Source: Haliotis rubra (Eukaryota). From it: a DNA stretch of 64,000 nucleotides. Below are positions 1 through 60,567 of the stretch, in pieces. Location: NCBI RefSeq assembly GCF_003918875.1, contig NW_025766002.1, positions 1,302,001 to 1,366,000 of the forward strand, given 5' to 3'. The translations under genes and the position numbers were made by a program. Each line of letters begins with the position of its first letter. Within the stretch, counting starts at the first letter, position 1. Under the pieces are notes generated by a model. That model was given only the letters and a program-made list of their open reading frames with translations. It did no database searches and was not told the DNA's origin.

Positions 1-427
1 AGATCCCAACATGGACGGAGTCAGTCAGTACAACATGCTCATCAATGGTGGAGCCAGCAAGCGAAATGAGTTCGTCTACAACATCTATGACGAGATTGAT
101 GCAGCTGCAATACGGTACGGAGATCTTAAGCTCATCCAAGGCAGTCCAGGAGCTCACAATGGTTGGGCTCCTTTGCCACATCTGGGAATTGATGAAGGTG
201 TCTATGAAGCTGATAACCAAACGTTCCCTCCCTTCATGCTCTACAACATCACTGCAGATCCAACCGAACACTTCGACCTCTCAGCCATGTACCCTGAGCT
301 GGTGGACATGATGAAGAAGAGGCTAGAAATCTGGAAACAGTCTGGTGTTCCGGCGCAGGACAATTCTAGTATTCCTGCAGCAAACCCAAAATACTATGAC
401 GGTGTATGGAGCCCAGGCTGGTGTTAA
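1..427 (+). CDS. Arylsulfatase B-like, copy 1 (C-terminal part only; 5' end lies outside the window)
   Basis: Open frame from the window edge encodes the same C-terminus as the full copies (GVSQY..LINGG..KRNEFVYNIYD...LYNITADPTEHFDL...WSPGWC*). AATAAA at about 500. Confidence 0.93.
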   Translation, partial: DPNMDGVSQYNMLINGGASKRNEFVYNIYDEIDAAAIRYGDLKLIQGSPGAHNGWAPLPHLGIDEGVYEADNQTFPPFMLYNITADPTEHFDLSAMYPELVDMMKKRLEIWKQSGVPAQDNSSIPAANPKYYDGVWSPGWC

Positions 428-624
428 TTTCTCTGAACTGATAAATGGACATTTCAAACTGCATCATTTCCATTTATTTTCACGTACATACAATTTCTTA
501 ATAAAAATCTTTATTTCAGAAAATGGAAGGAAAAAGTTACGATAATGAAATCAATCGCTCTTGAAGAAACCATGCACACTTTGCATAAGCATTGCCAGGA
601 CGTCAAGGTGGCAAGGTGCGAAGG

Positions 625-1122
625 TGGCAAGGTGGGCGAGCTGTCAAAGGCGCCGCGCTAGTAAGCGAAAGGTGCCTGGATCGATCCCCACTTGTGACCT
701 GGTGTAAAAACCTTGGAGCTAACATTACTTGCAGGCTCTTTCATTGTTGTCACAACCCCTTGTGTGCAGTACACAACCCTCTGCACTTAAAATAACCCAC
801 TAATCCGATGGTAGGTGACCAAATGGTGGACACACGAACACGTGCAGGCACCTAGTTGCGGGTATAGTAACGTGAAGTACCATTGGGCAAAGGACTGTGA
901 CTATGTGTCCCAGTTCACATAACTGCAAATGGGTACCTTGTGAGGATGAGACTGTGTGATAACTCGCTGCTCCTAACGGGTTACATGAATTGAATACTCC
1001 CCAGGGAGTTGAGTTGGTTAAAAGAATGCCAGGAAAAAAGACCGTTGATCAAGGGAACACTCCAGCGCCTTGAACGTATACTAGTTGCGTGGATATGTGC
1101 GCTATATAAATATCCTATAATA
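625..1122 (+). mobile_element. tRNA-derived SINE with conserved-core-like body and L2-like 3' tail
   Basis: Degenerate A box (ggtgggcgagctgtcaaagg) and B box (ggatcgatccc), internal AAATGGGTACC and CTCCCCAGGGAGTTGAG motifs, and 3' end agcgccttga...gcgctatataaat...taataa resembling the tail of the L2 at 48562-48630. Confidence 0.6.
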
Positions 1123-2318
1123 AAGTCAAGTAGACGCTACGTATCTTGTATTCAAAGAGCATATCCAAATTCAAACAAAATTCAATAAAATTATATAAAT
1201 CATAAGAAGATTGTACGATGAGCATTCTTCTAATAGTATTTCAAGTAGGTATTTTTAAAGCGTCACGAACTTAATATGCCACCATATCCACCAGCATACA
1301 AAACAGACAGACAGACACAAAATGAAACATTTAACAATACACAAATACAAAGTGCAAGATATTATGAAGTCACCTTGCCTGAAAATATTTATAACCTTCA
1401 CTGAAACAGTTTCACATGGCCAATAGGCCGACGTTTGGATTTGTTTTCTATTTTTATGCTTTTGACATTTTTGGTGCATTAAAAAGGCCAAATGCGGGAT
1501 ACTAGGCAAACCGCAGCAATGGAGAATATTGCCCAACGAAAAAGGCCAACCCGTGCCTAAATTTGGAGGAAAAATGTTAAGTTGTAATTCGACGGTGTTG
1601 CATTTGATACGGGTATCCCAACCCACCACAACTGCAACAATATTATTTCACCTGTTTACATCCAACACCTTCAAAGTATAGAAGCCTTCTGCCAAAATCG
1701 GACTGGTGGAACAAATATGTACTTGGGATTATAATCTTTTAAGTTTTTGTTTTTGTGGTGTCATCTTGCACATGAAATGAAGGTTGTCAGATATCTTTAT
1801 ATCTTGAATAAACACCATGACTAGTCTAACAAAAATCACTACAATTAAGTGAAAAACATTTTTATTTATATTTTTGTCTAATTCTAAGGTAAAGTTTTTG
1901 TAATGTAGTGTTTAAAAAGTAAATATAATGATGAGATTATTATAGAAAGATACTACATTCAAATATGTTGTAATAATGTTTCAATAATTAAAAAACAAAA
2001 GCACCACAATGAACTTTTCGTCACTTTGTATTTGATCCGTTTGTTTGAGTTTTTTGGTAATTACTAAAAGTTTGTGCTACAGATTTTGTAACCACTAAAA
2101 ACAAAACTTGACAAGACTTTGCATTGATTATGACGGGTACCACCGGTAAACATGGTTATGCTCACCTTTTCGCGATCACCTGGTGTCATTCACTATTTCA
2201 CAGTGATTCATACACACATCCTGTCATCGTATCGCATGGTGGCAATCACTGGATTGTCTGCTCCAGACTCGATTTGTTTACAAACAACATCGTATAGCTG
2301 TACTACTGCTGAGACAAA

Positions 2319-9005: not shown

Positions 9006-10457
9006 ATGAGTGTCCAAAGAGCTGTTTTGTTCTGGATTGTTGGGACTTTTGTTATCTGCGAGTGTGCAGAGAAACCCCATATTGTGTTTATCGTAGCTGA
9101 TGACCTCGGATGGAACGATGTCGGATTCCGGAACCCTCAAATGATCACCCCTAACCTGGACAGACTGGCCAAAGCTGGTGTCATCCTCAACTCATCTTAC
9201 GTCCAGCCTCTATGCTCGCCTTCCAGAAGTTGTTTCATGTCGGGATATTTCCCTTATCACACTGGTCTACAAGATAGCGTTGTTAAGATAAACGCAGCAA
9301 AATTCCTTCCGGCTAACTTAACAACAATGCCACAGAAACTGAAACAACTTGGCTATGATGCTCACATGGTTGGGAAGTGGCATATTGGCTTCTGTAACTG
9401 GCGGTATACACCTACAGAGAGAGGCTTTGACTCCTACCTTGGATATTACACTGGTGATGAGGACTATTTTACTCGCATGGCACACAATAAGAATGGTACA
9501 GAGGGATTTGATTTTCACTTCAACAAAACTGCCTATAGAGATGACAATGGAACCTATTCTCTGCACATGTGTTTGCCAACAAGGCTGTTGAAATCATTGA
9601 AAACCACGACAATAGTAAGCCACTTTATCTATACCTTCCGTTCCAGGCTGTACATTTACCTCTTGAAGTTCCACCAAAATATGAAAACATGTACAAGAAC
9701 ATAGAAACCATAAATAGAAGGATCTATTGTGGAATGGTAACTGCGTTAGACGAAGCTGTAGGAAATATCACGAAGGCATTAGAAGAAAAAGGTCTCATGG
9801 ACAATCTATTGTTGGTCTTTACAACTGATAATGGTGGCCCTACTTTTGTTGCTGCCAATAACCTGCCCTTACGAGGAGCCAAAAATACTCTCTGGGAAGG
9901 GGGAACGAAAGGGACTGGATTCATCTACAGTAAATCCCTTCTCAAGAAGACGGGCTACCTCAACACTGGAATGATGCATGCAGTGGACTGGTACCCGACA
10001 TTGGTGGAGCTGGCTGGTGGAGAGAACACAGATCCCAACATGGACGGCATCAGTCAGTTCGACATGCTCATCAATGGTGGACCCAGCAAGCGGAAATGAG
10101 TTCGTCTACAACATCTATGACATAAAGGATGCAGCTGCCATAAGATACGGAGATCTCAAGCTCATGCAAGGGAGTCCAGGAGATCACAACGGTTGGGCAC
10201 CTTTGCCACATCTAGGAATAGATGAAGGTTTCTATGAAGCTGATAAGCAAACATTCCCTCCATTCATGCTCTACAACATTACTGCAGATCCAACCGAACA
10301 CTTCGACCTCTCAACTAAGTATCCTGATCTACTAGACATGATGAAGAAGAGGCTAGAGAACTGGAAGAAATCACGAGTTCCGGCACAAGACAATTCTCCT
10401 GATCCTGCAGCTAACCCCAAATACTTCGGTGGTATTTGGAGTCCAGGCTGGTGCTGA
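9006..10457 (+). pseudogene. Arylsulfatase B-like copy 2, full length but with two frameshifts (pseudogene or assembly error)
   Basis: Signal peptide MSVQRAVLFWIVGTFVICEC, then ADDLG, CSPSR, GKWHIG, DNGG and WSPGWC. Relative to paralogs there is an extra CT at 9561-9562 and an extra base at about 10093-10096. Confidence 0.88.
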
Positions 10458-12655: not shown

Positions 12656-13490
12656 TCATGTGTTTTTGGGGATCAAATACACGGCGGATAAGGTAAAAAA
12701 TGTAACAAAAGGATCATCGGAACAACGTAACAACTTTTTCATCACAATATACTCAACAAAATAACTATCATGCAATCCTTTCGTAGTTCCATAACCGGTC
12801 CGGGACGCTTTCACCGCTCTCCACGTACTCTCAGTTTTATTGGTACACGCACCATTCTCTGCATTCACAAATTCCTTACTATGATTCACTGTCACATGCT
12901 CATATCCCATCTCATTCAGTCTGGCATACGCCTTCCAACAATCAGAATGAATTACTGATTCCAGTCGCACCTACTTTCTCAAAAGGGTATCCGCATCACG
13001 CTCTACAACTTCCAAAAACATCCTGTTACTTTCCTTCTCGATACCCCCAAACACCCACACACCATCCACTCGCCTTCCTCGATGAAACTTGCGCTTCCCA
13101 AACTTACTCTCATCAATCTCCACTTCAATCCCTGGCCCACCTATCATCTCATTCTCCTCTTCCATCACAAACAAACACACATCTCTGCAATAATTAAACC
13201 AGTCAACTAAAGTATGATCCGACCCCAGACGCAACTGCTTTTTCACAAAATTCTCTCTCACTTGATAAACCCAATAAAATGTCAATTTCATAAATTTACT
13301 AACGGACAAATGATAATTTAAAAAACAAGAATCACGCTTTGCTACAATCTTATAATTGCATTTTTTATTCGAACAACGCCACACATACCCCTCACTCCGA
13401 CTGGAATCCTTTCGCTTCCCGATACTACCACTGTCAAACCTCACACACTTCCCACTGAAATCTCCAATCAAACGAGCTATATAGAATACA
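12656..13490 (-). pseudogene. Merlin/IS1595-family DDE transposase with an in-frame stop
   Basis: WRCSNKKC zinc-ribbon half, VEIDESKFGKRKFHRGR..G.WVFGGIE, IHSDCWKAY, H.TVNHS..FV and TNKTESTW. An in-frame TAG at 12971-12973 separates ORFs 12971-13687 and 12656-12970. Confidence 0.9.
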
Positions 13491-13765
13491 TTTCTACTTC
13501 CGGGTCGGGGACCCGTAAAGTGCAGCTTTCCCGCGTTTTTGTTCTTATTCCATGCAACGTGATGTATTATGGTTGCTATGATACATAGGTTTTGTAAATA
13601 CACTTTGTTCCTAACATTTGCATAGATTCTGTGGGGTACGTCTTGACAGGTGAAATATCCAGCTGGTAATCTAAAAGAATGTGTCACCCAGGCACGCCAT
13701 GATATGTGTTATCTTATAGAAACCTTTAAATAGAAGCACACTGTACCACACTGAGCAGAAGCAAA

Positions 13766-46401: not shown

Positions 46402-47844
46402 ATGCATTTCACATCAACTGTATGCCTTCTTTTGGCTTCAGTTTTCTGTGAGTGTGCAGAGAAACCCCACATTGTGTTTATAGTTGCTGATGACCTCGGA
46501 TGGAATGATGTTGGATTTCGGAACCCTCAAATGATCACCCCTAACCTTGACAGACTGGCCAAAGCGGGAGTCATTCTCAACTCTTCTTATGTCCAACCTT
46601 TGTGTTCACCCTCCAGAAACTGTTTCATGTCAGGATATTTCCCCTATCACACAGGACTACAAGATGACGTTATTGTGGTAAACGAAGCAAAACACCTACC
46701 GGCCAATCTAACAACAATCCCTCAGAAACTGAAACAACTTGGCTATGACACTCACATGGTTGGGAAGTGGCATCTTGGTTTCTGTAACTGGAAGTATACA
46801 CCCACAGAGAGAGGCTTTGACTCCTATCTTGGATATTACTCTGGAATGGAGTATTATTTTAACCACACGAGAACGGAAGGCAAAGATGAAGTAGGACTGG
46901 ATTTTCGCTATAACAAGACTGCCTACAGAGACGCCAATGGAACCTATTCTGCAAACGTGTTTGCAGACAGAGCTATTGAAATCATTCAGAACCACGACAA
47001 CAGTAAGCGACTTTATCTGTACCTTCCATTCCAGTCTGTACATGCACCTCTTGAAGTTCCAGCTAAATATGAAAACATGTACAAGAACATAGAAACCATA
47101 AGCAGAAGGATCTATTGTGGAATGGTGAGTGCGTTAGACGAAGCTGTTGGTAATATCACTCAGGCATTAGAAGAAAAAGGTCTCATGGACAATCTACTGT
47201 TGGTCTTTACAACTGATAACGGTGGTCCCACGTTTAGAGCTGCTAATAACTTGCCTTTACGGGGATGCAAAAACACTCTCTGGGAAGGTGGAACGAAAGG
47301 AATTGGATTCATCTACAGTAAATCCCTTCTCAAGAAGACAGGCTACCTCAACACTGGAATGATGCATGCTGTGGACTGGTACCCGACATTGGTGGAGTTG
47401 GCTGGTGGAGAGAACACAGATCCCAACATGGACGGAGTCAGTCAGTACGACATGCTCATCAACGGCGGGCCCAGCAAGCGGAATGAGTTCGTCTACAACA
47501 TCTATGAGGACAGGGAAGCAGCTGCTATCAGGTTCGGAGATCTCAAGCTCATGCAAGGGAGTCCAGGAATTCACAATGGTTGGGCTCCTTTGCCACATCT
47601 GGGAATTGATGAAGGTGTCTATGAAGCTGATAACCTAGTGTTCCCTCCCTTCATGCTGTACAACATTACTGCAGATCCAACCGAACACTTCGACCTCTCA
47701 GCCAAGTATCCTGATCTACTGGACATGATGAAGAAGAGGCTGGAGAACTGGAAGAAATCCCGTGTCCCGGCCCAGGACCCTTCTCCTGTTCCAAGAGCGA
47801 ACCCCAAATACTATGACGGCGTATGGAGTCCTGGATGGTGTTGA
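46402..47844 (+). CDS. Arylsulfatase B-like copy 9 (480 aa)
   Basis: ATG at 46402 (caacATG), signal peptide MHFTSTVCLLLASVFCEC, all motifs intact. Confidence 0.95.
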   Translation: MHFTSTVCLLLASVFCECAEKPHIVFIVADDLGWNDVGFRNPQMITPNLDRLAKAGVILNSSYVQPLCSPSRNCFMSGYFPYHTGLQDDVIVVNEAKHLPANLTTIPQKLKQLGYDTHMVGKWHLGFCNWKYTPTERGFDSYLGYYSGMEYYFNHTRTEGKDEVGLDFRYNKTAYRDANGTYSANVFADRAIEIIQNHDNSKRLYLYLPFQSVHAPLEVPAKYENMYKNIETISRRIYCGMVSALDEAVGNITQALEEKGLMDNLLLVFTTDNGGPTFRAANNLPLRGCKNTLWEGGTKGIGFIYSKSLLKKTGYLNTGMMHAVDWYPTLVELAGGENTDPNMDGVSQYDMLINGGPSKRNEFVYNIYEDREAAAIRFGDLKLMQGSPGIHNGWAPLPHLGIDEGVYEADNLVFPPFMLYNITADPTEHFDLSAKYPDLLDMMKKRLENWKKSRVPAQDPSPVPRANPKYYDGVWSPGWC

Positions 47845-48343: not shown

Positions 48344-48561
48344 AATATTTTGTGAGAATTTGAGAGAAATTGCCTTAATTCAACTGACAATTTGTAAGCA
48401 TTACGTTGGATCACATTTACTTGAGTTATGCATAGTTTGCGTCCAATAGATGCGCTTCGATCGATAGGTAGAATTTCTAAGTCTCCCAATCGCCCTGCCT
48501 TGGCAGTAAATCAAAGAAATTCCAATTAGTCTTGGCTTTACTGTCCCATCATGTTGTGAAC

Positions 48562-51085
48562 TAATAATAATAATAAATATGCATTTATAATGCGCGCAAT
48601 CCAGACAGATATGCCTGCTCAAGGCGCTACAAGGGGATTGTATAAAGATAAAAGTCAGGGAGTGTTGACTGGATTTAAATGTCACTATGATACTTGGAGA
48701 ACATATGGGTCTTTAGCCTTGATTTGAATTTCTCAAAGGTTGGACACAGTTTCAACTCTGATGGAAGTGAGTTCCAGAGGATAGGGGCAGTGCTGGAGAA
48801 GGATCTGTATCACATTGATAAATGTCTTCAGTCGATATTTAGGAACTTGGAGGAGATTTTGGTCACTTGATCGGAGTTTACGTGCTGGAGTGTGTGGAGT
48901 CAAGAGTTCAGATAGATAGTCAGGGCTGGTGTTATGGAGGCATCGATATGTGATAAAGAGAAGCTTGAACTCTATTCTAGCTTTTAATGGCAACCAGTGG
49001 AGGTCTCTGAGCACTGGTGTCATGTGCACATGTCTTGGTGTTCTTGTGATGATCTGTGCTGCAGAATTTTGCAGCACCTGTAGCTTAGATAGCAGTTTAC
49101 CACTGATGCCCTGAAGCAAACTGTTGCGGTAATCTAGTCTTGATGTTATTAGACCATGGGCAAGTACCTTTGCAACTTCTTATTAAATGTCGAATGTTGC
49201 TGATGGATCGGAGATGATAATAACAGGTTCGGCTGATGTGGGTAACCTATTTCTCCATGGATAGGTGTGCGTCCAGAAATACTCCCAGATCTTTAAGGTG
49301 GTCACTGAGAACTATTTCCGTATCCGCTATCAGAATGGATTGTTCTTCTACTCTGGCCAACTATTGCTTAGTGCCAATCAGCATCACCTCTGTTTTTTCT
49401 CCATTCAGTTTTAGCTTATTTGCTGTCATCCATGACTTAGTTGTTGCCGTACAATCAGACATGCGGTGGAAGAACTCCTGAAGGTTCTTGGGTTTGAATT
49501 TGTCCATCATTTGTGTATTGTCAGCATATCCATGGTGAAGAAGCTTGAGGTGTTGGATGATGTTAGCCAGATTTGCCGTGTACAGCGTGAAGAGTATCGG
49601 ACCTAAAACAGATCCTTGTGGAACACCACAGTGTAGTTTGACGAAATCGGATTTTTCATTGCCGATGATAACTGCTTGTCTACGATCTTCCAAGTAGGAT
49701 GAAAACCACTTGTGGCAGTTACCACGGATGCAAGATTCAACCAAAAGACGGCTTAGGAGAACTTCATGGTCGATGGTATCGAATGCCGCTGGCAGATCGA
49801 GCATGACAAGGGAAGCCATGAAGCCATCATCCAATGCAGACAGTAGGTCATTGAGGACACGTATCAGGGCTGTTTCGGTGCTGTAATATTGGCGGTATGC
49901 GGATTGGAACTTGTCAAGGATAGTATTGACAGATAGATGGACCTTTAGCCTGGTGTTGACAGCTCTTTCTAGTAGCTTGGACAGGAAGGAAAGGTTGGAC
50001 ACAAGTCGGAAGTTCTTAGGGTCATTAGGATCCAAGTTCGGCTTTTTGAGGTGAGGTCTCACAACTGCCTGTTTAAAGTGAGAAGGAAATATTCCAGATT
50101 TCAGGCTCATGTTTACAATTTCTGTTATGATAGGAAGCAGCTGATCTAGTAGCTGCAACAGAATCGCTGTTGGGATCGGGTCAAGGTCACACGTTGTAGG
50201 CTTGGGAGCAGTTATGAGGTCAGAAATCTCATTAGAGGAGAACGGATGAAAGTTAGTAAGTGGTTCACCACTGAAATTCTGTGATGATATGAGATATGAT
50301 ATGTGTTCAGCTTGTGAGTCAGTTTTGAGTGTATTTCTTATCTTGTCTATCTTGGTTATGAAGAAGACATTGAATGACTCAGCGAGGGCTTTCTGGTCTG
50401 AGAAAGAAGGGAGTCTACTATCGCTGTTCTTGCCCAGCCGTGATTTCATGAACCTGTGCATATTCCTGGGGTCTCGTTTTGAATTCTGCAGGGTATTCAG
50501 ACAGTGCTCCCGTTTAGCTTGGGATATAGCTTTAGTTGTGTTGTTTCTAGCCTGACAGTAGAGTTGCCTATGAACTTCAAGATGGGACTTACGCCATTTT
50601 CATTCAGACGTTCTTCGTAGAGATTTCGCTTCCTGTACCTGTTCATTATACCATGGAAGACCGTGACGGTGAGTTATTTTCTTCTCCGTGGGAGGGGTAT
50701 GTGTATCGAGCAGCTCATGTAGTGTCAGGTTGTACAACTGTACAAGCTGGTTACATCCTAGGGAGTATCTTTAGTCAACAAGTCTGAATATTCTAGGTCT
50801 GCCCGAAAAGCATCCATGTCAATGCTCTTCAAGCTTCTACACAGCACGTATTTGTGGTCGGGTTTTGGTTTATGAAGGTTGGTGTTAACAAGTACAAGGT
50901 GGTGATCTGACATCAGTCTGTCTTCTACTGACACGCTGGTGATGATGTTAGAGTCATCACGAGACAAAACCCAGTCGAGAATGTTTCCTGATTTGTGTGT
51001 TGCCTTATCAACGTGTTGCTGAAGACCGTGCGTATGGAGGAGAGATACGAACTTTTTCACATCAGGTTTATCTTCATAAACATCG
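48562..51085 (-). mobile_element. 5'-truncated L2/CR1-group LINE, inactive
   Basis: Endonuclease end (THKSGNILDWVL, SDHHLV), RT (FRLVSNLSFLSKLLE, QSAYR, AAFDTIDH, GVPQGSVLGP, YADN instead of YADD), L2-type C-terminus LHWLP...RKLRS and an (ATT)n tail. Absent from the paralogous flanks at about 55840 and about 61150. Confidence 0.92.
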
Positions 51086-53794
51086 TGCAAAGCAGCGACG
51101 ATAAGCTCAACTCACTCACAACTCACTCACTCACTCTGAAATGTCCATGTAGCAGAAATAGGAATGAACTGATTGTAATTTTGACAGGTGCTGCTCAGTC
51201 GGTTACAACATGTGCAAAATATCAGCTGAAGAGTTTTGTCCGTGATAACATTAACACTGTACTGATGAACTGCACTTTGAAGCAGACATAAAGTATGAAA
51301 ATGTGCGTGTCGAGAACCAGATATTCAAGAGTTCACACGTCGGTTTATGAATAACAGTCTTAAAAGTATATTAAAGATTATTTGAAGTTTCAGACAGAAT
51401 CTGAAGAAAAACTTAATAGCTCGACTAAAACCTATATCTTATTATAGAGATGGATGTCTTTAAATAATGTTGTTAAAATGGTATTTTTTACGACTATGAA
51501 CGGAAGTTGTTTCAACTTGAACACGTTAAGTAATGTATGACTTATTAATGCTGTATCTCCAGACTAAAGGGGTGTGGTTCTACATCACTTTAACTGTTAC
51601 TTATGATGCCAACATGGCTTCGCGCCGGCAGAAAATGATATCACTGTCGGCTACAGCAATGTCAGCACAAAAGCCCTGCTTCTGCAGTGAACATAAAACT
51701 CGCATCAGTATACTATCACTATTTGTAAGTGCACTAGCTGGAACCTACCCTTGAAGAATAGCTTAACAAAATACACAGCTTCCAACCCAGAAAAGAAAAA
51801 AAGCTTGAGCTGTCGAGTCACAAGAGCTGTGCTTGGTTACCATGCAGGTAGCAGAAGTACCGTAAGTCCTTAGTCATTATATACTTATGTTAAATATTTA
51901 CCTGTGATTTCTAGTTCTTTTACTGTCTATTCTGGACTCAATCACTGACTGAAAGGATGAATTAATAATCTCTATCACACGGTGATGATATCAAGTTGTA
52001 AGCAAAAAGGTGAGCGTACCCTGTCCCATCGATGACAGTACTACAAACACATGCAAAGGAACGGCAATTGTTCACCCGAACACTCAAATGTATTGCAGGT
52101 AATTTCTGTCACTCTTATATTACATTTTGAAATATTATTTCCTCCTTATTTTACAGCAAAACCTTTGAACGCTTTCCAAAGACCTTCATTGTTGTAACCC
52201 CTGTTCAAATATGACTGGCGTATGAACATCAAAACGACTTCAAGCAAGGACGACAACTCTATTGCCATTTCATTCCAACAGTCATAAACATTGCTGAAGC
52301 ACTCGAGAGTTTCTGCTGTTAAAAACAATTAAGCTGTTTTAAACAATTACAATGAAGATGATTACCAGCTGTATACCATATATTTCCAAAGGTATATTTC
52401 TAAATAAGATTATTTTCATTCCTGCTGTTATAAGTCCCCCCAAAATAAACAGGTTCAGAGTATTCTCAAATTGAAGAATACGTGGAGTGTCCAAATATGA
52501 TTTGGTTTACGGGATGTCTAGCAGTTGTCTCACCCTGCATGTTCAACATTGCTTCCATAAACCTTTAGAAATTTAAAATAAATACGTTGAAAATAGTGTG
52601 AAGGACTGCAAGATACAGAAGTTACAAAGACCTTATCAATTAGGAAATTCAGCACTTCATATAGTGGGGTTTTGTTTGTTAAATACAATTCAAATGAAAG
52701 TTACAATCTTTTCTTGACAAATTTTCCTAAACCTTTGAAGAGAGACATGTAACTACTAATATACAAATATATGGTCCCCACGTTCAGTGATAAATGGCAC
52801 ATACATAATGGAATGCAGTTTTTATTAAGTCTGTTGTGCGACATGGTGGTTTACAAATATGAAAATCAATTGTTTTGACAACGTTGAACTTGGTACTTAC
52901 AGAATTACAAAATTAAAGTAGGTCAAGCAGAGGTTATGAGAATCCACAGTACATTGTTTATGCTTATCTGAAATACTTTCAGCGTTTATAATGTTGTTAA
53001 CGGGTGCGCTCGTCACACCAAACATCCGGGCCCTATTCCCACATGGGCGATGCAAATTTCTGTCTGGTGTCCCAACCCGTGATATTGCTAAACATGGCGT
53101 TAACCCTCGCTACTCACTCACTCATTCACCCACTGCTTCAGAGCATTAGAAATTTTGGTTAATGCTTGAGACAGGGGTTTCTAATACATTGCTCGACACA
53201 GCAATTTATCTTTCTTTGTGCTTATGTTTCTAAAGTTTTTATATACCAGTACAAAAGTAAACTGTGTTTTAGACAAGAGTCAAAAGTTGATAGTACTAAT
53301 GCTTGGTTCAGTTAGATTTATTCCTCCTTTAACAAATGGCATAATACACAATGTTCATTTCTGGGAAATCAAAACACTGTGCTCATCTCTATAAATTAAG
53401 CCCGTCTGCCTACTCTCAAGCCTGTCCTCAAAAACGGGTTGGCATGTCTTTCAATTAGATTCGCTGGTGTTTTGTTCTAACATTTTCTGCATTTCTGAAA
53501 GTTACACAAACATTTGGCTGCAGTGAAAATGTCAACATGTTTCATTTTCAGTGACTAATTCAATACTTTCGTTATCATGACCGTGCAAAATTAATATTGC
53601 GTTTTTCGCGTCTACGTGTACAATCTGGATTCTTCATTTTCTGTGTGATATAATCAGTCTGGAATGTGTTGATGTACGCATTTCTTCCAATGATAAGAAT
53701 TCAAGCTGGTACAAATAAGGTAAGGCACGTGTTACGTTATCTATAAAAGTTCTCTTATATACGACTGCGTTTCACTGCATACACCAGAAACAAC

Positions 53795-55237
53795 ATGCAT
53801 TTCACATCAACGGTATGCTTTCTTTTGGCTTCAGTTCTCTGTGATTGTGCAGAGAAACCTCACATTGTGTTTATAGTTGCTGATGACCTCGGATGGAACG
53901 ATGTTGGATTCCGGAACCCTCAAATGATCACCCCTAACCTGGACAGACTGGCTACAGCGGGAGTCATCCTAAACTCTTCCTACGTCCAGCCTCTATGTTC
54001 GCCCTCAAGAAACTGCTTCATGTCAGGATATTTCCCCTATCACACAGGACTACAAGATGGCGTTGTTGGGGTAGACGAAGCAAAACACCTACCGGCCAAT
54101 CTAACAACAATCCCTCAGAAACTGAAACAACTTGGCTATGATGCTCACATGGTTGGGAAGTGGCATCTTGGTTTCTGTAACTGGCAATATACACCCACAG
54201 AGAGAGGCTTTGACTCCTACCTTGGATATTACGGTGGTGACGAAGACTATTTTAACCACTCGAGAATGGCAGTCAAAGGTGAAGTAGGACTGGATTTTCG
54301 CTATAACAAGACTGTGTATAGAGACGCCAATGGAACGTATTCTGCAAACGTGTTTGCGGACAGAGCTATTGAAATCATCGAGAACCACGACAACAGTAAG
54401 CCACTTTATCTGTACCTTCCATTCCAGTCTGTACATGCACCTCTTGAAGTTCCAGCTAAATATGAAAACATGTACAAAAACATAGAAACCATAAGCAGAA
54501 GGATCTATTGTGGAATGGTGACTGCGTTAGACGAAGCTGTTGGCAATATCACTCAGGCATTAGAAGAAAAAGGTCTCATGGACAATCTATTGTTAGTCTT
54601 TACAACTGATAACGGTGGCCCCACGTATAGAGCATCTAATAACTTGCCTTTACGGGGAGCCAAAAATACTCTCTGGGAAGGTGGGACGAAAGGAACAGGA
54701 TTCATCTACAGTAAAAACCTTCTCAAGAAGACGGGCTACCTCAACACTGGAATGATGCATGCTGTGGACTGGTACCCGACCTTGGTGGAGCTGGCTGGTG
54801 GAGAAAACACAGATCCCAACATGGACGGAGTCAGTCAGTATGACATGCTCATCAATGGTGGACCCAGCAAGCGGAATGAGTTCGTCTACAACATCTATGA
54901 CAACAGGGAAGCAGCTGCAATCAGGTACGGAGATCTCAAACTCATGCAAGGGAGTCCGGGAGATCACAATGGTTGGGCTCCTTTGCCACATCTGGGAATT
55001 GATGAACGTATCTATGAAGCTGATGACCAGAAGTTCCCTCCCTTCATGCTCTACAACATTACTGCAGATCCAACCGAACACTTCGACCTCTCAGCCAAGT
55101 ATCCTGATCTACTGGACATGATGAAGAAGAGGCTGGAGAACTGGAAGAAATCCCGTGTCCCGGCCCAGGACCCTTCTCATGTACCAAGAGCGAATCCGAA
55201 ATACTATGGCGGAGTATGGAGTCCTGGATGGTGTTGA
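53795..55237 (+). CDS. Arylsulfatase B-like copy 10 (480 aa)
   Basis: Intact ORF with signal peptide and all sulfatase motifs. Confidence 0.95.
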   Translation: MHFTSTVCFLLASVLCDCAEKPHIVFIVADDLGWNDVGFRNPQMITPNLDRLATAGVILNSSYVQPLCSPSRNCFMSGYFPYHTGLQDGVVGVDEAKHLPANLTTIPQKLKQLGYDAHMVGKWHLGFCNWQYTPTERGFDSYLGYYGGDEDYFNHSRMAVKGEVGLDFRYNKTVYRDANGTYSANVFADRAIEIIENHDNSKPLYLYLPFQSVHAPLEVPAKYENMYKNIETISRRIYCGMVTALDEAVGNITQALEEKGLMDNLLLVFTTDNGGPTYRASNNLPLRGAKNTLWEGGTKGTGFIYSKNLLKKTGYLNTGMMHAVDWYPTLVELAGGENTDPNMDGVSQYDMLINGGPSKRNEFVYNIYDNREAAAIRYGDLKLMQGSPGDHNGWAPLPHLGIDERIYEADDQKFPPFMLYNITADPTEHFDLSAKYPDLLDMMKKRLENWKKSRVPAQDPSHVPRANPKYYGGVWSPGWC

Positions 55238-55974
55238 CACAAACTAAGATGGGATGCACATTAAATATTCAAGAAATGCTTTTTCGCATTGATTTTCTGT
55301 AAATGATATTGAATTAAACCGCAACGTTGCATGCGACTGCATTGTCTATTAACGAACATTTGGTGATTACTTGAAGAATATATAAACAGTGTAATGATAC
55401 ATACATTTGAGTCTTGATATTACCTGGTTTTTCTTCATTACGTGCACCTTCTCGTGTGACGTAAGGGGCGACCGTAGGCATCAGATGGTCAGAGATTCAC
55501 TAAAATGATACAACATCCTATAGGACATGTAAGGTTTACGTATATATCGTCATTCATTACTGAAAGTGGCGTAAAAGCGAACGCTTTAACCACTAGGCTA
55601 CCCCACCGCCCCTTGATATTTTGTGAAATGTCTGGTGAAAATTTGAGAGTAATTTTCAACAGACAATTTGCAAGTATTACTTTGGATCCCATTTATCTAA
55701 ATTATGCACAGTTTGCGTCCAATAGATGCGCTTCGATCGATAGGTAGAATGACTAAGTCTCTCATTCGCCCTGAAAATTGCCTTTGGTAGTTTATCAAAG
55801 AAATACCGATTAGTCGGGGCTTGATTGTTCCATCAAGCTGGCGTACTGTGAAATAGCTTCATTGTCGTTCAAAGCAGAGGCGTTAAGCTCAACTCACTCA
55901 GAACACCCTCACTGTGAAACATACAATAGAAATAGGAATGAATTGATTGTAATTTTGGCAGTTGGCTCTATGGT

Positions 55975-56202
55975 GGTATGGTGATCAGCCTTCAGTTGCT
56001 GGTGATCTATAGCACGTTTTATATTGTATTGTTGTCTGTAGTTATTTTTTTTTAAGGTAGCGTAATAGTTTTAGATTTAGAGCTGTGATACTCTAGTAGT
56101 TTTAACTTTATTGATATATGATATAATCATTAATTGTTCTCGTCACGATATGGCTGAAATATTGCCGAAGTGACGTTAAATATTAACTCACTCACTCACT
56201 CA
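55975..56202 (+). mobile_element. 3'-end fragment of a retroposon with (CACT)n tail (duplicated at 61279-61543)
   Basis: TSD ctctatggt. The 3' end cgtcacgatatggctgaaatattgccga.gtgacgttaaa+(cact)n resembles the SINE A/B tail. Confidence 0.7.
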
Positions 56203-58575
56203 CTCTATGGTAGCGTGAGTGGTGGCTGCTCTTCGCCGTTCATGCTGTTAGGTTGTTTACAACATGTACCAGATATCAGTTGAAGAGTTGTGTCCGTGAT
56301 AACATTAACACAGTACTGACAGAAGCCATCACTTTGAAGCAGCCGTAAAATATGAAACTGTTCGTAGCCACGCAACAACAAATGTGCGTCTCGAGAACCA
56401 GATATTCAAGAGTTCAAGCGTCGGTTTATGAATAACACTCTTAGAAGTATATCAAAGATGATTTAAAGTTTCAGACATATCTCACTGAAGAAAAACTTAA
56501 TATCTCGATTAAAGCCTATATCTTATTATAGAGATGGATGTCTTTAAATAATGTTGTGGAACTGTTAGTATCTTACGACTATGAACTGAAGTTGTTTCAA
56601 CTTGAACACGTTAAGTAATGTATGACTTATTAATGCTGTATCTCCAGACTAAAGGGGTGTGGTTCTACATCACTTTAACTGTTACTTATGATGCCAACAT
56701 GGCTTCGCGGCCGGCAAAGAATGATATCACTCTCGGCTACAGCAATGCCAGCACAAAAACCCTGCTTCTGCAGTAAAAATACAACTCGCATCAGTATACT
56801 ATCACTATTTCTAAGTGCACTAGCTGGAACCTCCCCTTGAAGAATAGCTTCAAAAAGTACAGTGCTTCCAACCCAGAAAAGAAAAAAAGCTTGAGCTGTC
56901 GAGTCACAAGAGCTGTGCTTGGTTACCATGCAGGTAGCAGAAGTACCGTAAGTCCTTAGTCATTATATACTTGTGTTAAATATTTACCTGTGATTTCTAG
57001 TTCTTTTCCTGTCTATTCTGGACTCAATCACTGACTGAAAGGATGAATTAATAATCTCTATCACACAGTGATGATATCAAGTTGCAAGCAAAAAGGTGAG
57101 CGTACCCTGTCCCATCGATGACACTACTACAAACACATGCAAAGGAACGGCAATTGTTCACCCGAACACTCAAATGTATCACAGGTAATTTCTGTCACAT
57201 TTTGAAATATCCGCCTTGTTTTACAGCTAAACCTTTGAACGCTTTCCAAAGACCTTCATTGTTGTAACCCCTGTTCAAATATGACTTGTCAAATGAGACG
57301 TTTTTGGAAACGTATGTAGGCATTGGTGAGCCACTCGTGGTATTTCGAGACAAACCGAATAAAGACTCGTGTCAATCTGGAAGGATTTCATATTGGCGTA
57401 TGAACATCAAAACGACTTCAAACAAGGACGACAACTCTATTGCCATTTCATTCCAACAGTCATAAACATTGCTGAAGCACTCGAGAGTTTCTGCTGTTAA
57501 AAACAATTAACCTGTTTTAAACAATTACAATGAAGATGATTACCAGCTGTATACCATATATTTCCAAAGGTATATTTCTAAATAAGATTATTTTCATTCC
57601 TGCTGTTAAGTCCCCCCAAAATAAACAGGTTCAGAGTATTCTCAAATTGAAGAATACGTGGAGTGTCCAAATATGATTTGGTTTACGGGATGTCTAGCAG
57701 TTGTCTCACCCTGCATGTTCAACATTGCTTCCATAAACCTTTAGAAATTTAAAATAAATACGTTGAAAATAGTGTGAAGGACTGCAAGATACAGAAGTTA
57801 CAAAGACCTTATCAATTAGGAAATTCAGCACTTCATATACTGGGGTTTTTGTTTGTTAAATACAATTCAAATGAAAGTTACATTCTTTTCTTGACAAATT
57901 TTCCTAAACCTTTGAAGAGAGACATGTAACTACTAATATACAAGTATATGTATGGTCCCCACGTTCAGTGATAAATGGCACATACATAATGGAATGCTGT
58001 TTTTATTAAGTCTGTTGTGCGAGATGATGGTTTACACATATGAAAATCAATTGTTTTGACACCGTTGAACTTGGTACTTACAGAATTGCAGTAGGTCAGG
58101 CAGAGGTTATGAGAATCCACAGTACATTGTTTATGCCTGTCTGAAATACTTTCAGCGTTGTTAAGGAGTGCGCTCGTCCCGCCAAACATCCGGGCCCTAT
58201 TCCCACATGGGTGATGTAAATTTCTGGTGTCCCAACCCGTGATATTGCTAAACATGGTGTTAACCCTCGCTACTCACTCACTCACTCACCCACTGCTTCA
58301 GAGCATTAGAAATGTTGGTTAATCCTTGAGACAGGGGTTTTCTAATACATTGCTTGACACAGCAATTTATCTTTCTTTGTGCTTATGTTTCTAAAGTTTA
58401 TATACCAGTACAATAGTAAACTGTGTTTTAGACAAGAGTCAAAAGTTGATATTACTAATACTTGGTTCAGTTAGATTTATTCTTCCTTTAACAAATGGCA
58501 TAATACACAATGTTCATTTCTGGGAAATCAAAACACTGTGCTCATCTCTATATTAAGCCCGTCTGCCTACTCTCA

Positions 58576-58745
58576 CTGACTGACTGACTGAGTTTAGTTT
58601 TACGCCGCTTTTAGCAATATTCCAGCAATATCACGGCGGGGGACACCAGAAATGGGCTTCACACATTGTGCCCATGTGGGGAATCGAACCCGGGTCTCCG
58701 GCGTGACGAGCCAACGCTTTAACCACTAGACTATCCCGCCGCCCC
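58576..58745 (-). mobile_element. SINE family A, young insertion specific to the copy 11 unit
   Basis: The empty site cctactctcaagcctg is intact at about 53408-53424. Confidence 0.9.
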
Positions 58746-59124
58746 TCAAGCCTGTCCTCAAAAACGGGTTGGCATGTCTTTCAATTAAATTCGCTGGTGT
58801 TTTGTTCTAACATTTTGTGCAATTCTTAAAGTTACACAAACATTTGGCTGCAGTGAAAATGTCAACATGTTTCATTTTCAGTGACTGATTCAATACTTTC
58901 GTTATCATGACCGTGCAAAATTAATATTGCGTTTTTCGCGTCTACGAATACAATCTGGATTCTTCTTTTACTGTGTGATATAATCAGTCTGGAATGTGTC
59001 GATGTACGCATTTCTTCCAATGATAAGAATTCAAGCTGGTACAAATAAGGTAAGGCACGTGTCACGTTATCTTTAAAAGATCTCTTATATACGACTGCGG
59101 TTCACTGCATACACCAGAAACAAC

Positions 59125-60567
59125 ATGCATTTCACATCAACTGTATGCTTTCTTTTGGCTTCAGTTCTCTGTGAGTGTGCAGAGAAACCCCACATTGTTT
59201 TTATAGTTGCTGATGACCTCGGATGGAACGATGTTGGATTCCGGAACCCTCAAATGATCACACCTAACCTGGACAGACTGGCCACAGCGGGAGTCATCCT
59301 AAACTCTTCCTACGTCCAGCCTCTATGTTCGCCCTCAAGAAACTGCTTCATGTCAGGATATTTCCCCTATCACACAGGACTACAAGATGGCGTTGTTGGG
59401 GTAAACGAAGCAAAACACCTACCGGCCAATCTAACAACAATCCCTCAGAAACTGAAACAACTTGGCTATGATGCTCACATGGTTGGGAAGTGGCATCTTG
59501 GTTTCTGTAACTGGCAATATACACCCACAGAGAGAGGCTTTGACTCCTATCTTGGATATTACTCTGGTGGCGAAGACTATTTTAACCACTTGAGAATGGT
59601 AGGCAAAGGTGAAGTAGGACTGGATTTTCGCTATAACAAAACTGTGTATAGAGACGCCAATGGAACGTATTCTGCAAACGTGTTTGCGGACAGAGCTATT
59701 GAAATCATTCAGAACCACGATAACAGTAAGCCACTTTATCTCTACCTTCCATTCCAGTCTGTACATGCACCTCTTGAAGTTCCAGCTAAATATGAAAACA
59801 TGTACAAAAACATAGAAACCATAAGCAGAAGGATCTATTGTGGAATGGTGAGTGCGTTAGACGAAGCTGTTGGCAATATCACTCAGGCATTAGAAGAAAA
59901 AGGTCTCATGGACAATCTATTGTTGGTCTTTACAACTGATAATGGTGGCCCCACGTATACGGCTGCTAATAACCTGCCTTTACGAGGAGCCAAGACTACT
60001 CTCTGGGAAGGGGGAACGAAAGGAACTGGATTCATCTACAGTAAAAACCTTCTCAAGAAGACGGGCTACCTCAACACTGGAATGATGCATGCTGTGGACT
60101 GGTACCCAACTTTGGTGGAGCTGGCTGGTGGAGAGAACACAGATCCCAACATGGACGGAGTCAGTCAGTACGACATGCTCATCAATGGTGGACCCAGCAA
60201 GCGGAATGAGTTCGTCTACAACATCTATGACGACAGTGAAGCAGCTGCAATCAGGTACGGAGATCTCAAACTCATGCAAGGAAGTCCAGGAACTCACAAT
60301 GGTTGGGCTCCTTTGCCACATCTGGGAATTGATGAAGGTATCTATGAAGCTGATAACCAAGTGTTCCCTCCCTTCATGCTCTACAACATTACTGCAGATC
60401 CAACCGAACACTTCGACCTCTCAGCCAAGTATCCTGATCTACTGGACATGATGAAGAAGAGGCTGGTGAACTGGAAGAAATCCCGTGTCCCGGCCCAGGA
60501 CCCTTCTCCTGTTCCAAGATCGAACCCGAAATACTATGGTGGTGCATGGAGTCCTGGATGGTGTTGA
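59125..60567 (+). CDS. Arylsulfatase B-like copy 11 (480 aa)
   Basis: Intact ORF with signal peptide and all sulfatase motifs. Confidence 0.95.
   Translation: MHFTSTVCFLLASVLCECAEKPHIVFIVADDLGWNDVGFRNPQMITPNLDRLATAGVILNSSYVQPLCSPSRNCFMSGYFPYHTGLQDGVVGVNEAKHLPANLTTIPQKLKQLGYDAHMVGKWHLGFCNWQYTPTERGFDSYLGYYSGGEDYFNHLRMVGKGEVGLDFRYNKTVYRDANGTYSANVFADRAIEIIQNHDNSKPLYLYLPFQSVHAPLEVPAKYENMYKNIETISRRIYCGMVSALDEAVGNITQALEEKGLMDNLLLVFTTDNGGPTYTAANNLPLRGAKTTLWEGGTKGTGFIYSKNLLKKTGYLNTGMMHAVDWYPTLVELAGGENTDPNMDGVSQYDMLINGGPSKRNEFVYNIYDDSEAAAIRYGDLKLMQGSPGTHNGWAPLPHLGIDEGIYEADNQVFPPFMLYNITADPTEHFDLSAKYPDLLDMMKKRLVNWKKSRVPAQDPSPVPRSNPKYYGGAWSPGWC

What the first reader, a model, noticed from the sequence alone, without database searches (positions are those of the whole stretch)
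1..60567. Tandem battery of 11 or more intronless, signal-peptide-bearing ARSB-like sulfatases: a candidate digestive/detox desulfation arsenal
Seen: 11 same-strand copies in 60 kb, 8 intact, each with an uninterrupted CDS, signal peptide, CxPxR formylglycine motif and multiple N-glycosylation sequons. The array runs off the left edge of the window. Known: vertebrate ARSB is a single-copy, multi-exon lysosomal GalNAc-4-sulfatase, and gastropod guts are classic sources of sulfatase activity. Inference: an intron-less (retrocopy-like) founder was amplified into a lineage-specific array, plausibly to strip sulfate from dietary algal polysaccharides or sulfated phenolics.
Basis: partly seen in the sequence, partly recalled or inferred. 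Interest (0 to 1): 0.85.

Follow-up and report, generated by a model that had tools for sequence, protein, structure and literature searches.

The report
Abalone single-exon ARSB-like sulfatase gene array
This stretch of blacklip abalone DNA holds eleven head-to-tail copies of an intron-free arylsulfatase-B-like gene, part of a large abalone-wide family that probably began as a reverse-transcribed gene copy. It may help digest sulfated seaweed sugars, but expression and substrate were not tested, and the genes are already annotated.

Summary
The window is Haliotis rubra QXJH01000002.1:1302001-1366000. It carries 11 same-strand ARSB-like sulfatase copies: 8 intact, 2 frameshifted, 1 cut by the left edge. 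Each intact copy is one uninterrupted 479-480-codon ORF with a signal-peptide-like N-terminus, a CSP(S/T)R motif, all 11 ARSB catalytic residues and 6-8 N-glycosylation sequons.

The array runs on for at least three more genes to the left. H. rufescens has the same single-exon tandem arrangement.

The nearest multi-exon relatives have about 14 coding exons at matching positions. They are from Patella vulgata, Potamilus and a three-gene H. rubra array. Every Haliotis member checked in the clade is single-exon. This supports one retroposition before the Haliotis radiation, followed by DNA-level tandem duplication, gene conversion and some gene death. Selection is purifying overall (dN/dS 0.12-0.27), with two relaxed or diversifying loops. 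A GATA-plus-TATA promoter module is conserved across copies and in both species.

The digestive role is plausible but untested, because no RNA data could be reached. ARSB-like expansions also occur in non-herbivorous molluscs.

The genes are already RefSeq "arylsulfatase B-like", and mollusc ARSB expansion is published. Other notes of this scan report further sulfatase arrays in this genome. Modest interest.

The parts
1..427 (+). c1: C-terminal 141 codons of a sulfatase copy cut by the window's left edge, with no stop before the natural ...SPGWC end
9006..10457 (+). c2: pseudogene with a +2 bp insertion at about 9557 and a +1 bp insertion at about 10092. Its promoter module is still present.
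13766..15208 (+). c3: intact 480-codon single-exon ARSB-like sulfatase (= P0001)
13709..13732 (+). c3 core promoter: TTATCT (GATA site, reverse orientation) at -57 and TTTAAATA at -41 from the ATG. The same module sits at the same spacing in all 9 window copies that keep a 5' end.
17899..19341 (+). c4: intact 480-codon copy. The mechanical ORF starts at 17839; the homologous Met is at 17899.
21407..22806 (+). c5: pseudogene. Start codon and promoter are replaced, with a -4 bp deletion at about 21449 and a -1 bp deletion at about 21692.
31752..33194 (+). c6: intact 480-codon copy (CSPTR variant of the motif)
35982..37421 (+). c7: intact 479-codon copy
40043..41482 (+). c8: intact 479-codon copy (= P0007), 97% identical to c7
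35713..43842 (+). Youngest tandem duplication: two abutting 4.07 kb units (35713-39774 and 39774-43842) at 97% identity, each carrying one gene
46402..47844 (+). c9: intact 480-codon copy (= P0008)
53795..55237 (+). c10: intact 480-codon copy
59125..60567 (+). c11: intact 480-codon copy, the last of the array
51189..61908 (+). Second young duplication: units of about 5.3 kb (51189-56567 and 56243-61908) at 90-95% identity, carrying c10 and c11
59067..59091 (+). c11 core promoter: TTATCT at -58 and TATATA at -39
48401..51090 (-). Degraded non-LTR retrotransposon between c9 and c10 (RVT_1 E 1e-26; weak Exo_endo_phos_2 match). Filler, not part of the gene unit.
12656..13687 (-). Relic of an IS1595/ISXO2-like DDE transposase ORF just upstream of c3

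Best explanation
The window is the right-hand two thirds of a tandem array of at least 14 genes in Haliotis rubra. The genes encode single-exon, secretory-pathway, formylglycine-dependent sulfatases of the ARSB/ARSI/ARSJ type (SulfAtlas S1_2-like).

**Origin (inferred from gene structures and trees).** A processed mRNA of a 14-exon mollusc ARSB-like gene was reverse-transcribed and inserted before the Haliotis species diverged. It acquired a compact TATA + GATA promoter. It was then multiplied by unequal crossing-over into several arrays. Patchy gene conversion and occasional gene death followed (c2, c5).

**Biochemistry (inferred from conserved residues).** The leader peptide sends the protein into the ER. 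There Cys68 in CSPSR would be converted to formylglycine. The N-glycosylated enzyme would then hydrolyse sulfate esters with the ARSB catalytic set.

**Biological role (inference, not shown).** The enzymes act in the digestive gland or gut, secreted or lysosomal. They would strip sulfate, plausibly 4-O-sulfate on galactose-, GalNAc- or fucose-type residues, from algal galactans and fucoidans so that glycosidases can proceed. Two variable surface loops would give paralogs somewhat different substrate preferences.
For: **Identity**
- Pfam Sulfatase matches end to end.
- The best solved relative is human ARSB 1FSU at E 8e-110. The next hits are bacterial S1_19 carrageenan 4-sulfatases at about 1e-55.
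- All 11 catalytic residues are invariant in the 8 intact copies.
- All top homologues are metazoan, mostly mollusc.

**Retro-origin**
- Patella P0024 has 14 coding exons, Potamilus P0019 has 14, and H. rubra P0017 has about 14 (three tandem copies), with matching boundaries.
- Single coding exons were found in the window copies, P0002, P0003, P0010, P0012, P0018 and P0014.
- All intronless rows form one clade beside Patella P0024. The multi-exon P0015/17 pair is the next sister.

**DNA-level duplication**
- Homology covers about -180 to +200 around the CDS, and whole 4-5 kb units in the young pairs.

**Selection**
- dN/dS is 0.12-0.27 at dS 0.08-0.6.
- Loops at aa 83-98 and 146-170 have pN/pS 0.5-0.8, against 0.02-0.1 in the core.

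**Regulation**
- GATA at -57/-58 and a TATA-like box (degenerate in c6) at about -39/-41 are conserved in 12 of 13 copies of this clade, in both species sampled (H. rubra and H. rufescens).

**Context**
- Four ARSB proteins were found in the scallop hepatopancreas proteome, and mollusc ARSB duplication has been linked to algal diet (PMC5159873).
- The abalone core gut microbiota is poor in sulfatases (PMC5870069).
- The gut glucosinolate sulfatase of Plutella arose from an ARSB duplicate (PMC5066984).
- Heterogeneous H. rufescens sulfatases were purified in 1991 (title cited in PMC5519703).
Against: - No expression or protein evidence for these genes was reachable. The only runs holding the sequence are DNA contigs.
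- No transcript-derived protein above 60% identity from Logan appeared in the protein search.
- No poly(A) tail or target-site duplication remains, so retroposition rests on intron absence and phylogeny alone.
- Support for Haliotis-only monophyly is moderate (86/56).
- ARSB-like tandem arrays also exist with introns in H. rubra (L010), in filter-feeding bivalves and in amphioxus. Dozens of arylsulfatase transcripts occur in a predatory triton snail. Copy number is therefore not tied to macroalgal herbivory.
- A signal peptide does not separate secreted from lysosomal enzymes.
- Loop pN/pS stays below 1, so diversifying selection is not demonstrated.
Confidence: 0.6

Rival explanations
1. The array is real and retro-derived, but the enzymes serve endogenous housekeeping or extracellular-matrix functions rather than food digestion. 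Examples are lysosomal turnover of the animal's own sulfated glycosaminoglycans and mucus, shell-matrix or larval ECM remodelling as in sea-urchin arylsulfatase, or metabolite desulfation as in the muricid Tyrian-purple pathway.
For: - The closest characterised enzyme is lysosomal ARSB acting on chondroitin/dermatan 4-sulfate.
- Arylsulfatases in molluscs have been linked to exoskeleton hardening and to Tyrian purple synthesis (PMC5519703).
- ARSB-like expansions occur regardless of diet.
- The title of Spaulding & Morse 1991 mentions changes during development.
Against: - A purely housekeeping role rarely needs dozens of paralogs kept under purifying selection.
- GATA sites next to the TATA box are typical of gut and endoderm promoters (general knowledge of GATA4/5/6 factors; motif).
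- Digestive-gland sulfatase activity is classical in abalone and limpets, and ARSB proteins are found in scallop hepatopancreas.
Confidence: 0.22
2. The enzymes mainly detoxify or scavenge small sulfated compounds such as sulfated phenolics, phlorotannin conjugates, sulfated sterols or saponins. This would parallel the Plutella glucosinolate sulfatase.
For: - The ARSB-derived glucosinolate sulfatase is a precedent in a herbivore gut (PMC5066984).
- A vetigastropod (Turbo) arylsulfatase is reported to remove the 4-sulfate of xylose in sea-cucumber saponins (cited in PMC5519703).
- Commercial abalone and snail sulfatases are used on steroid sulfates (PMC2684592 listed; general knowledge).
Against: - Nothing in the sequence points to small-molecule rather than glycan substrates.
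- The next-best structural relatives are polysaccharide 4-sulfatases.
Confidence: 0.1
3. Part of the apparent copy number is an assembly artefact, with haplotypes or collapsed and expanded repeats in a long-read draft. Some of the 'pseudogenes' would then be sequencing errors.
For: - c7/c8 are exactly abutting 4.07 kb units at 97% identity, a pattern that false haplotypic duplication can give.
- The c2 lesions are small insertions.
Against: - Most copies differ by 12-15% in DNA (dS 0.2-0.5), far beyond allelic divergence.
- An independent DNA data set yields separate contigs for c3 and c4 at equal depth.
- H. rufescens, assembled independently, has the same tandem single-exon layout with about 14 members of this subclade.
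- c5 has four independent lesions.
Confidence: 0.05
4. The intronless genes came by horizontal transfer from a bacterium rather than by retroposition.
For: They are intronless, and bacterial S1 sulfatases are abundant on seaweeds.
Against: - The closest relatives at 55-60% identity are multi-exon mollusc genes, and ARSB is the best PDB hit. Bacterial sulfatases score far lower.
- GC content of about 42-44% in the coding windows is only slightly above the flanks.
- The genes have a eukaryotic TATA promoter and an AATAAA signal.
Confidence: 0.01

Closest known systems
Human arylsulfatase B (N-acetylgalactosamine-4-sulfatase, PDB 1FSU; SulfAtlas S1_2)
   Same: - Best solved relative (E 8e-110).
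- Same two-domain Sulfatase + Sulfatase_C layout.
- Identical catalytic set (D53, D54, C91, P93, R95, K145, H147, H242, D300, N301, K318).
- Signal peptide and N-glycosylation.
   Different: - Vertebrate ARSB is a single multi-exon gene and lysosomal (general knowledge). Here there are dozens of single-exon paralogs.
- Two loops (aa 83-98 and 146-170) differ and vary among paralogs.
- The substrate is unknown.
Published mollusc ARSB expansions (Chlamys farreri ARSB1-7, Aplysia californica 16 copies; Lyu et al. 2016, PMC5159873)
   Same: - Same family.
- Lineage-specific duplications.
- Four members detected in digestive-gland proteomics.
- The same hypothesis of adaptation to algal polysaccharides.
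   Different: - That work did not describe gene structure or arrays.
- The abalone clade is intronless and larger: at least 23 genes in H. rubra and at least 30 in H. rufescens by cluster counts.
Scallop intronless r-opsins (retroposition then tandem duplication; PMC5700196)
   Same: Same evolutionary mechanism in a mollusc: an intron-containing parent gave an intronless retrogene, which then spread by tandem duplication.
   Different: Different protein family and a much smaller scale (3 genes).
Plutella xylostella glucosinolate sulfatase (SulfAtlas S1_10)
   Same: An ARSB-derived duplicate recruited as a gut enzyme acting on dietary sulfated compounds in a herbivore.
   Different: - An insect, with few copies.
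- A defined small-molecule substrate.
- No evidence that the abalone enzymes detoxify anything.
Bacterial S1_19 carrageenan 4-sulfatases (e.g. PDB 6B0J, 6PRM, 9HH3)
   Same: - Second-best solved relatives (E about 1e-55).
- They remove 4-O-sulfate from galactose in red-algal galactans. This regiochemistry is analogous to ARSB's GalNAc-4-sulfate and fits a red-algal diet.
   Different: They are only distantly related in sequence, bacterial, and not in the same subfamily.
Multi-exon ARSB-like tandem arrays in H. rubra itself (L007, L010)
   Same: Same species, same family, tandem and same-strand. Identity to the window copies is 62% for L007 and 51% for L010.
   Different: - These keep about 14 coding exons and span 7-16 kb per gene.
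- L007 is the closest intron-bearing Haliotis relative, and so a candidate parent lineage.

Membership tests
S1 formylglycine-dependent sulfatases (Pfam PF00884) | Full-length match to the Sulfatase domain above the curated cut-off | tested here: met
   184-191 bits against a cut-off of 25, profile positions 1-300 of 301, in all 8 intact copies
S1 formylglycine-dependent sulfatases (Pfam PF00884) | C/S-x-P-x-R formylglycine motif with the downstream L/M-T/S-G | tested here: met
   C68-S-P-S/T-R72 followed by ...F-M-S-G in all intact copies
S1 formylglycine-dependent sulfatases (Pfam PF00884) | Metal-binding and catalytic residues (Asp-Asp, Lys-x-His, His, Asp-Asn, Lys) | tested here: met
   D30, D31, K122, H124, H214, D272, N273 and K290 align to ARSB D53, D54, K145, H147, H242, D300, N301 and K318. 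They are invariant in the 8 copies.
S1 formylglycine-dependent sulfatases (Pfam PF00884) | Actual Cys-to-formylglycine conversion and sulfate-ester hydrolysis | not testable with these tools
   Needs expressed protein, mass spectrometry and an activity assay
SulfAtlas S1_2 (ARSB/ARSI/ARSJ type) | Closest to ARSB-type sequences rather than other S1 subfamilies | tested here: met
   1FSU scores E 8e-110; the next subfamilies score 1e-55 or weaker. The proteins cluster with metazoan ARSB/I/J-like proteins. No SulfAtlas HMMs were available, so the subfamily call is by nearest neighbour (ARSB = S1_2 per PMC5066984).
SulfAtlas S1_2 (ARSB/ARSI/ARSJ type) | N-acetylgalactosamine-4-sulfatase activity | not testable with these tools
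   No substrate data. The Plutella glucosinolate sulfatase shows that ARSB descendants can change substrate.
Retrogene (processed-mRNA-derived gene) | Lacks all introns present in the parental or related genes | tested here: met
   The 13 intron positions shared by Patella, Potamilus and H. rubra L007 genes are all absent from the continuous ORFs
Retrogene (processed-mRNA-derived gene) | An intron-containing relative at another locus in the same genome | tested here: met
   The P0015/P0017 array lies on contig QXJH01000382.1 and the window on QXJH01000002.1. It is the sister lineage in the trees. Whether it is the true parent is not shown.
Retrogene (processed-mRNA-derived gene) | Poly(A) remnant and target-site duplications | tested here: not met
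   The aligned 3' flanks show no A-tract after the AATAAA, and homology continues past it. This is expected for an old event followed by DNA duplication, so it lowers certainty without excluding the origin.
Secreted or lysosomal digestive enzyme of the mollusc digestive gland | N-terminal signal peptide | tested here: met
   A hydrophobic 17-19-residue leader directly precedes the first beta-strand of the mature ARSB fold. This was judged by inspection; no signal-peptide predictor was available.
Secreted or lysosomal digestive enzyme of the mollusc digestive gland | Expression in digestive gland or gut, or presence in gut fluid | not testable with these tools
   No RNA run holds the sequence; the two runs found are DNA contigs. 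The conserved GATA sites are only suggestive.
Secreted or lysosomal digestive enzyme of the mollusc digestive gland | Activity on dietary sulfated polysaccharides | not testable with these tools
   Needs recombinant enzyme and defined carrageenan, fucoidan or ulvan oligosaccharides

The most novel reading that the evidence does not exclude
A single ancient retrogene gave abalone a host-encoded, GATA-driven battery of dozens of sulfatases. Their variable pocket loops would cover different sulfation patterns of red and brown algal polysaccharides. This battery would replace the sulfatase repertoire that abalone's own core gut bacteria lack. According to other unchecked notes of this scan, IDS-like sulfatases in the same genome underwent a parallel intronless amplification. 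If so, retro-amplification of sulfatases would be a genome-wide dietary adaptation of Haliotis.
Probability: 0.25. Interest if true: 0.6.

Novelty: new member of a known kind. Interest (0 to 1): 0.38.

Why it matters
If the digestive role holds, these arrays are the genetic basis of the long-used "abalone sulfatase" activity. They would also show an animal, rather than its microbiota, encoding a diversified toolkit for desulfating seaweed polysaccharides. That is relevant to abalone nutrition and aquaculture feeds, and to finding eukaryotic sulfatases for tailoring carrageenan or fucoidan. In evolutionary terms it is a clean, large example of retrogene birth followed by tandem amplification, gene conversion and gene death. 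The family, its expansion in molluscs and the dietary hypothesis are already published, and the genes are already annotated, so the advance is incremental.

Tried and rejected
1. **RNA evidence.** The look-up of sequencing runs (kind rna) returned only two runs of one sample, kept as contigs. Read laying showed that they cover intergenic DNA and high-copy repeats as well as genes. They are therefore genomic DNA, not RNA, and give no information on expression, transcript ends or UTR introns.
2. **Failed protein look-ups.** Exact look-ups of P0015 and P0021 were not on record, so the Mya arenaria gene structure was not obtained.
3. **Spaulding & Morse 1991.** The paper is not held. Only its title, as cited in PMC5519703, could be used.
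4. **Literature searches.** Searches on intronless or retrogene sulfatases in molluscs, and on sulfatase expansion in abalone genome papers, found nothing specific.
5. **Horizontal transfer from bacteria.** Considered and rejected on phylogeny and eukaryotic gene signals.
6. **Haplotype mis-assembly.** Rejected for all pairs except possibly c7/c8.
7. **Variable loops and the active site.** I did not map the variable loops onto a 3D model, because the structure tool returns no coordinates. Their proximity to the active site is therefore not shown.
8. **Positive selection.** No site-model test was run (no PAML or HyPhy). Sliding-window pN/pS never exceeded about 1 outside the signal peptide.

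Full report
**1. What is in the window**

The exact protein look-up places copy 3 at QXJH01000002.1:1315766-1317208 of the Haliotis rubra assembly GCA_003918875.1. The window is therefore QXJH01000002.1:1302001-1366000, plus strand. It contains no N.

A tblastn of copy 3 against the window finds 11 same-strand copies and nothing on the other strand:

| Copy | Coordinates | State |
|---|---|---|
| c1 | 2-427 | last 141 codons, cut by the left edge |
| c2 | 9006-10457 | broken |
| c3 | 13766-15208 | intact |
| c4 | 17899-19341 | intact |
| c5 | 21407-22806 | broken |
| c6 | 31752-33194 | intact |
| c7 | 35982-37421 | intact |
| c8 | 40043-41482 | intact |
| c9 | 46402-47844 | intact |
| c10 | 53795-55237 | intact |
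| c11 | 59125-60567 | intact |

- Eight copies are uninterrupted ORFs of 479-480 codons.
- c2 carries a +2 bp and a +1 bp insertion.
- c5 has lost its start codon and promoter and carries -4 bp and -1 bp deletions. None of these lesions lies in a long homopolymer.

**2. What the proteins are**

- All eight intact products match Pfam Sulfatase from end to end (184-191 bits; cut-off 25). They match Sulfatase_C near its cut-off.
- The best solved relative is human ARSB (1FSU, E 8e-110). The next are bacterial S1_19 carrageenan 4-sulfatases at about 1e-55.
- Reading the 1FSU alignment against the paralog alignment, the full ARSB catalytic set is invariant in all eight copies. In c03 numbering these are D30, D31, C68, P70, R72, K122, H124, H214, D272, N273 and K290. 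They correspond to ARSB D53, D54, C91, P93, R95, K145, H147, H242, D300, N301 and K318. The same ten-residue list is given in PMC5159873.
- Each protein begins with a 17-19-residue hydrophobic leader that abuts the first strand of the mature fold.
- Each has 6-8 NxS/T sequons, five at fixed positions.
- SulfAtlas files ARSB under S1_2 (PMC5066984). By nearest neighbour these are S1_2-like enzymes.

**3. The array is real and bigger than the window**

- Neighbouring copies are only 85-88% identical in DNA, with dS 0.2-0.5. That is far beyond allelic divergence.
- An independent DNA data set, 95-99% identical to the window, gives separate contigs for c3 and c4. Their depth is about equal to each other (51.6-71.4 in X1) and, in X2, to a unique intergenic contig (14.5-23.5 against 16.9).
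- To the left of the window, the same contig carries a 478-aa gene (P0003), a 480-aa gene and an inverted, more divergent 468-aa gene (P0010). The array therefore has at least 14 members.
- About 250 kb away lies another same-strand array of 496-aa single-exon paralogs, 68% identical.
- H. rufescens, assembled independently, shows the same layout: 1443-bp single-exon genes in tandem. It has about 14 annotated members of this subclade.
- Only c7/c8 could possibly be a haplotypic false duplication. They are abutting 4.07 kb units at 97% identity, with dS 0.08.

**4. Intronless origin**

I mapped coding exons by tblastn.

| Gene | Identity to c3 | Coding exons | Span |
|---|---|---|---|
| Patella vulgata P0024 | 59% | 14 | 9.3 kb |
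| Potamilus streckersoni P0019 | 59% | 14 | 22.8 kb |
| H. rubra P0017 | 62% | about 14 | three tandem copies on another contig |

The exon boundaries of these three genes fall at matching protein positions.

- Every Haliotis gene checked in the clade that holds the window copies has a single coding exon. These are P0002, P0003, P0010, P0012, P0018 and H. asinina P0014.
- In a 103-protein tree, all these Haliotis rows form one clade with Patella P0024 (SH-aLRT 96). The multi-exon P0015/P0017 pair is the next sister.
- In a careful 37-protein tree, the 34 Haliotis rows are monophyletic with moderate support (86/56), and Patella falls just outside.
- The P0014-type member is at least 90% identical among H. 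asinina, H. rubra and H. rufescens. The intronless state therefore predates the divergence of these species.

The simplest reading is one retroposition of a 14-exon ARSB-like mRNA in the abalone stem lineage. No poly(A) remnant or target-site duplication is left, so this rests on intron absence and phylogeny alone.

Bacterial origin is excluded. The nearest relatives are multi-exon mollusc genes, and the genes carry TATA and AATAAA signals.

**5. How the array grew**

- Homology among old copies extends about 100-250 bp upstream of the ATG and about 200 bp or more downstream, past the AATAAA that lies about 170-180 nt after the stop.
- The young pairs share whole 4-5 kb units (35713-39774 with 39774-43842; 51189-56567 with 56243-61908).
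- The copies therefore arose by DNA-level tandem duplication (unequal crossing-over), not by repeated retroposition.
- Spacers have been filled with a LINE fragment (48.4-51.1 kb), an IS1595-like transposase relic (12.7-13.7 kb), very high-copy SINE-like repeats and a 171-bp satellite.
- Along the CDS, the nearest paralog changes from window to window. For example, c3 is 98% identical to c11 at nt 1001-1150 but 87% overall. This fits patchy gene conversion.
- In the tree, part of the subclade interleaves H. rubra and H. rufescens genes (c3, P0003, P0005 with P0002, P0004 and others). c6-c11 form an H. rubra-only group opposite H. rufescens-only groups. This points to birth-and-death evolution plus concerted evolution after speciation.

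**6. Selection**

- Pairwise dN/dS is 0.12-0.27 for all intact pairs. All eight copies are under purifying selection.
- Sliding windows show a strongly constrained core (pN/pS 0.0-0.1).
- Three relaxed stretches stand out: the signal peptide (about 1.0), aa 83-98 just after the formylglycine helix (0.5-0.6), and aa 146-170 (0.67-0.83).
- This is compatible with loop diversification, but it does not demonstrate positive selection. I could not show that the loops line the pocket.

**7. Regulation**

- All nine window copies that keep a 5' end have TTATCT (a GATA site, reverse orientation) at -57/-58, apart from c6 at -54. The same holds for P0003 and for two H. rufescens copies.
- A TATA-like box lies at about -39/-41 from the ATG in these copies, although the box is degenerate in c6. 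Most c4-c11-type copies also have an upstream TGATAAG or AGATAAG at about -95 to -104.
- The one exception has foreign sequence upstream of its TATA-like box. This matches an earlier scan note of a transposon insertion there.
- The spacing implies a 5' UTR of only about 10-15 nt, so the whole transcript is probably intronless (inference).
- GATA4/5/6-type factors drive gut and endoderm genes in many animals (general knowledge). The motif is consistent with digestive-gland expression but does not prove it.

**8. Function**

Shown: the catalytic machinery is intact and the proteins enter the secretory pathway.

Inferred: formylglycine formation, sulfate-ester hydrolysis, and a role in processing dietary sulfated glycans.

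Supporting context:
- Scallop has seven ARSB genes, four of them detected in hepatopancreas proteomics. Aplysia has 16. The authors proposed adaptation to diverse algae (PMC5159873).
- The core digestive microbiota of H. tuberculata is poor in sulfatases (PMC5870069).
- An ARSB duplicate became the gut glucosinolate sulfatase of Plutella (PMC5066984).
- Heterogeneous sulfatases were purified from H. rufescens (Spaulding & Morse 1991; title only).
- The next-best structural relatives remove the 4-sulfate of galactose in carrageenan. This suits a red-algal diet.

Against the digestive reading:
- No expression data could be reached.
- ARSB-like arrays also exist with introns in H. rubra, in freshwater mussels and in amphioxus.
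- A predatory triton snail expresses dozens of arylsulfatase transcripts in its salivary glands.

**9. Novelty**

- All intact genes are already RefSeq models named "arylsulfatase B-like".
- The family, its expansion in molluscs and the dietary hypothesis are published.
- Retroposition followed by tandem duplication has a mollusc precedent in scallop opsins (PMC5700196).
- In the searchable literature I found no description of three things: the single-exon nature of this clade, its size, or its conserved promoter. The size is at least 23 genes in H. rubra and at least 30 in H. rufescens, counted.
- Other first-stage notes of this scan report further ARSB-like arrays and intronless IDS-like sulfatase arrays elsewhere in this genome. 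I could not check those.

I rate this a new, well-documented member of a known kind, of moderate interest.

Noticed in passing
L007:44760-46160 and L007:91184-92370 (H. rubra QXJH01000382.1): In the multi-exon ARSB-like genes, the tblastn hit to residues about 45-74 (end of exon 2) repeats head-to-tail at about 84-bp steps, more than a dozen times. This is a minisatellite built from an exon end. It agrees with an earlier scan note on exon-2/splice-donor repeats.
   Followed up: no
window 15401-15600, 16801-17200 and 17401-17800: Contig depth in the DNA runs jumps to between 1e4 and 5e6, against about 55 for unique sequence. These are extremely abundant short repeats. The element downstream of c3, c10 and c11 contains a tRNA-like ...GCGAACGCTTTAACCACTAGGCTACCCCACCGCCCC segment, so it is a tRNA-derived SINE.
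   Followed up: partly
window 12656-13687 (-): Two adjacent ORFs (104 + 238 aa) lie immediately upstream of c3. The first matches the ISXO2/IS1595-like DDE transposase domain (E 1.7e-10). This is a eukaryotic IS1595-like transposon relic sitting about 80 bp from the c3 start codon region.
   Followed up: partly
window 29311-30354: A 171-bp satellite, 6.2 copies at 82% match, lies in the 9-kb gap between c5 and c6.
   Followed up: no
window 48401-51090 (-): Degraded non-LTR retrotransposon (RVT_1 E 1e-26; weak endonuclease-RT match) between c9 and c10.
   Followed up: partly
L008:17391-23939 (H. asinina CM074540.1): The conserved intronless member P0014 lies next to a sulfotransferase gene (Sulfotransfer_1) on the opposite strand. 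A sulfatase and a sulfotransferase are thus neighbours.
   Followed up: no
protein search: No H. cracherodii protein, and only a 135-aa H. asinina fragment, falls in the window's subclade, although both species have RefSeq proteins in neighbouring clusters. This may be real presence/absence variation between abalone species, or an annotation or assembly gap.
   Followed up: no
L005:20553-20712 (H. rubra, left of the window): The 480-aa gene there keeps the TATA-like box at -41 but has unrelated sequence where the GATA site should be.
   Followed up: partly
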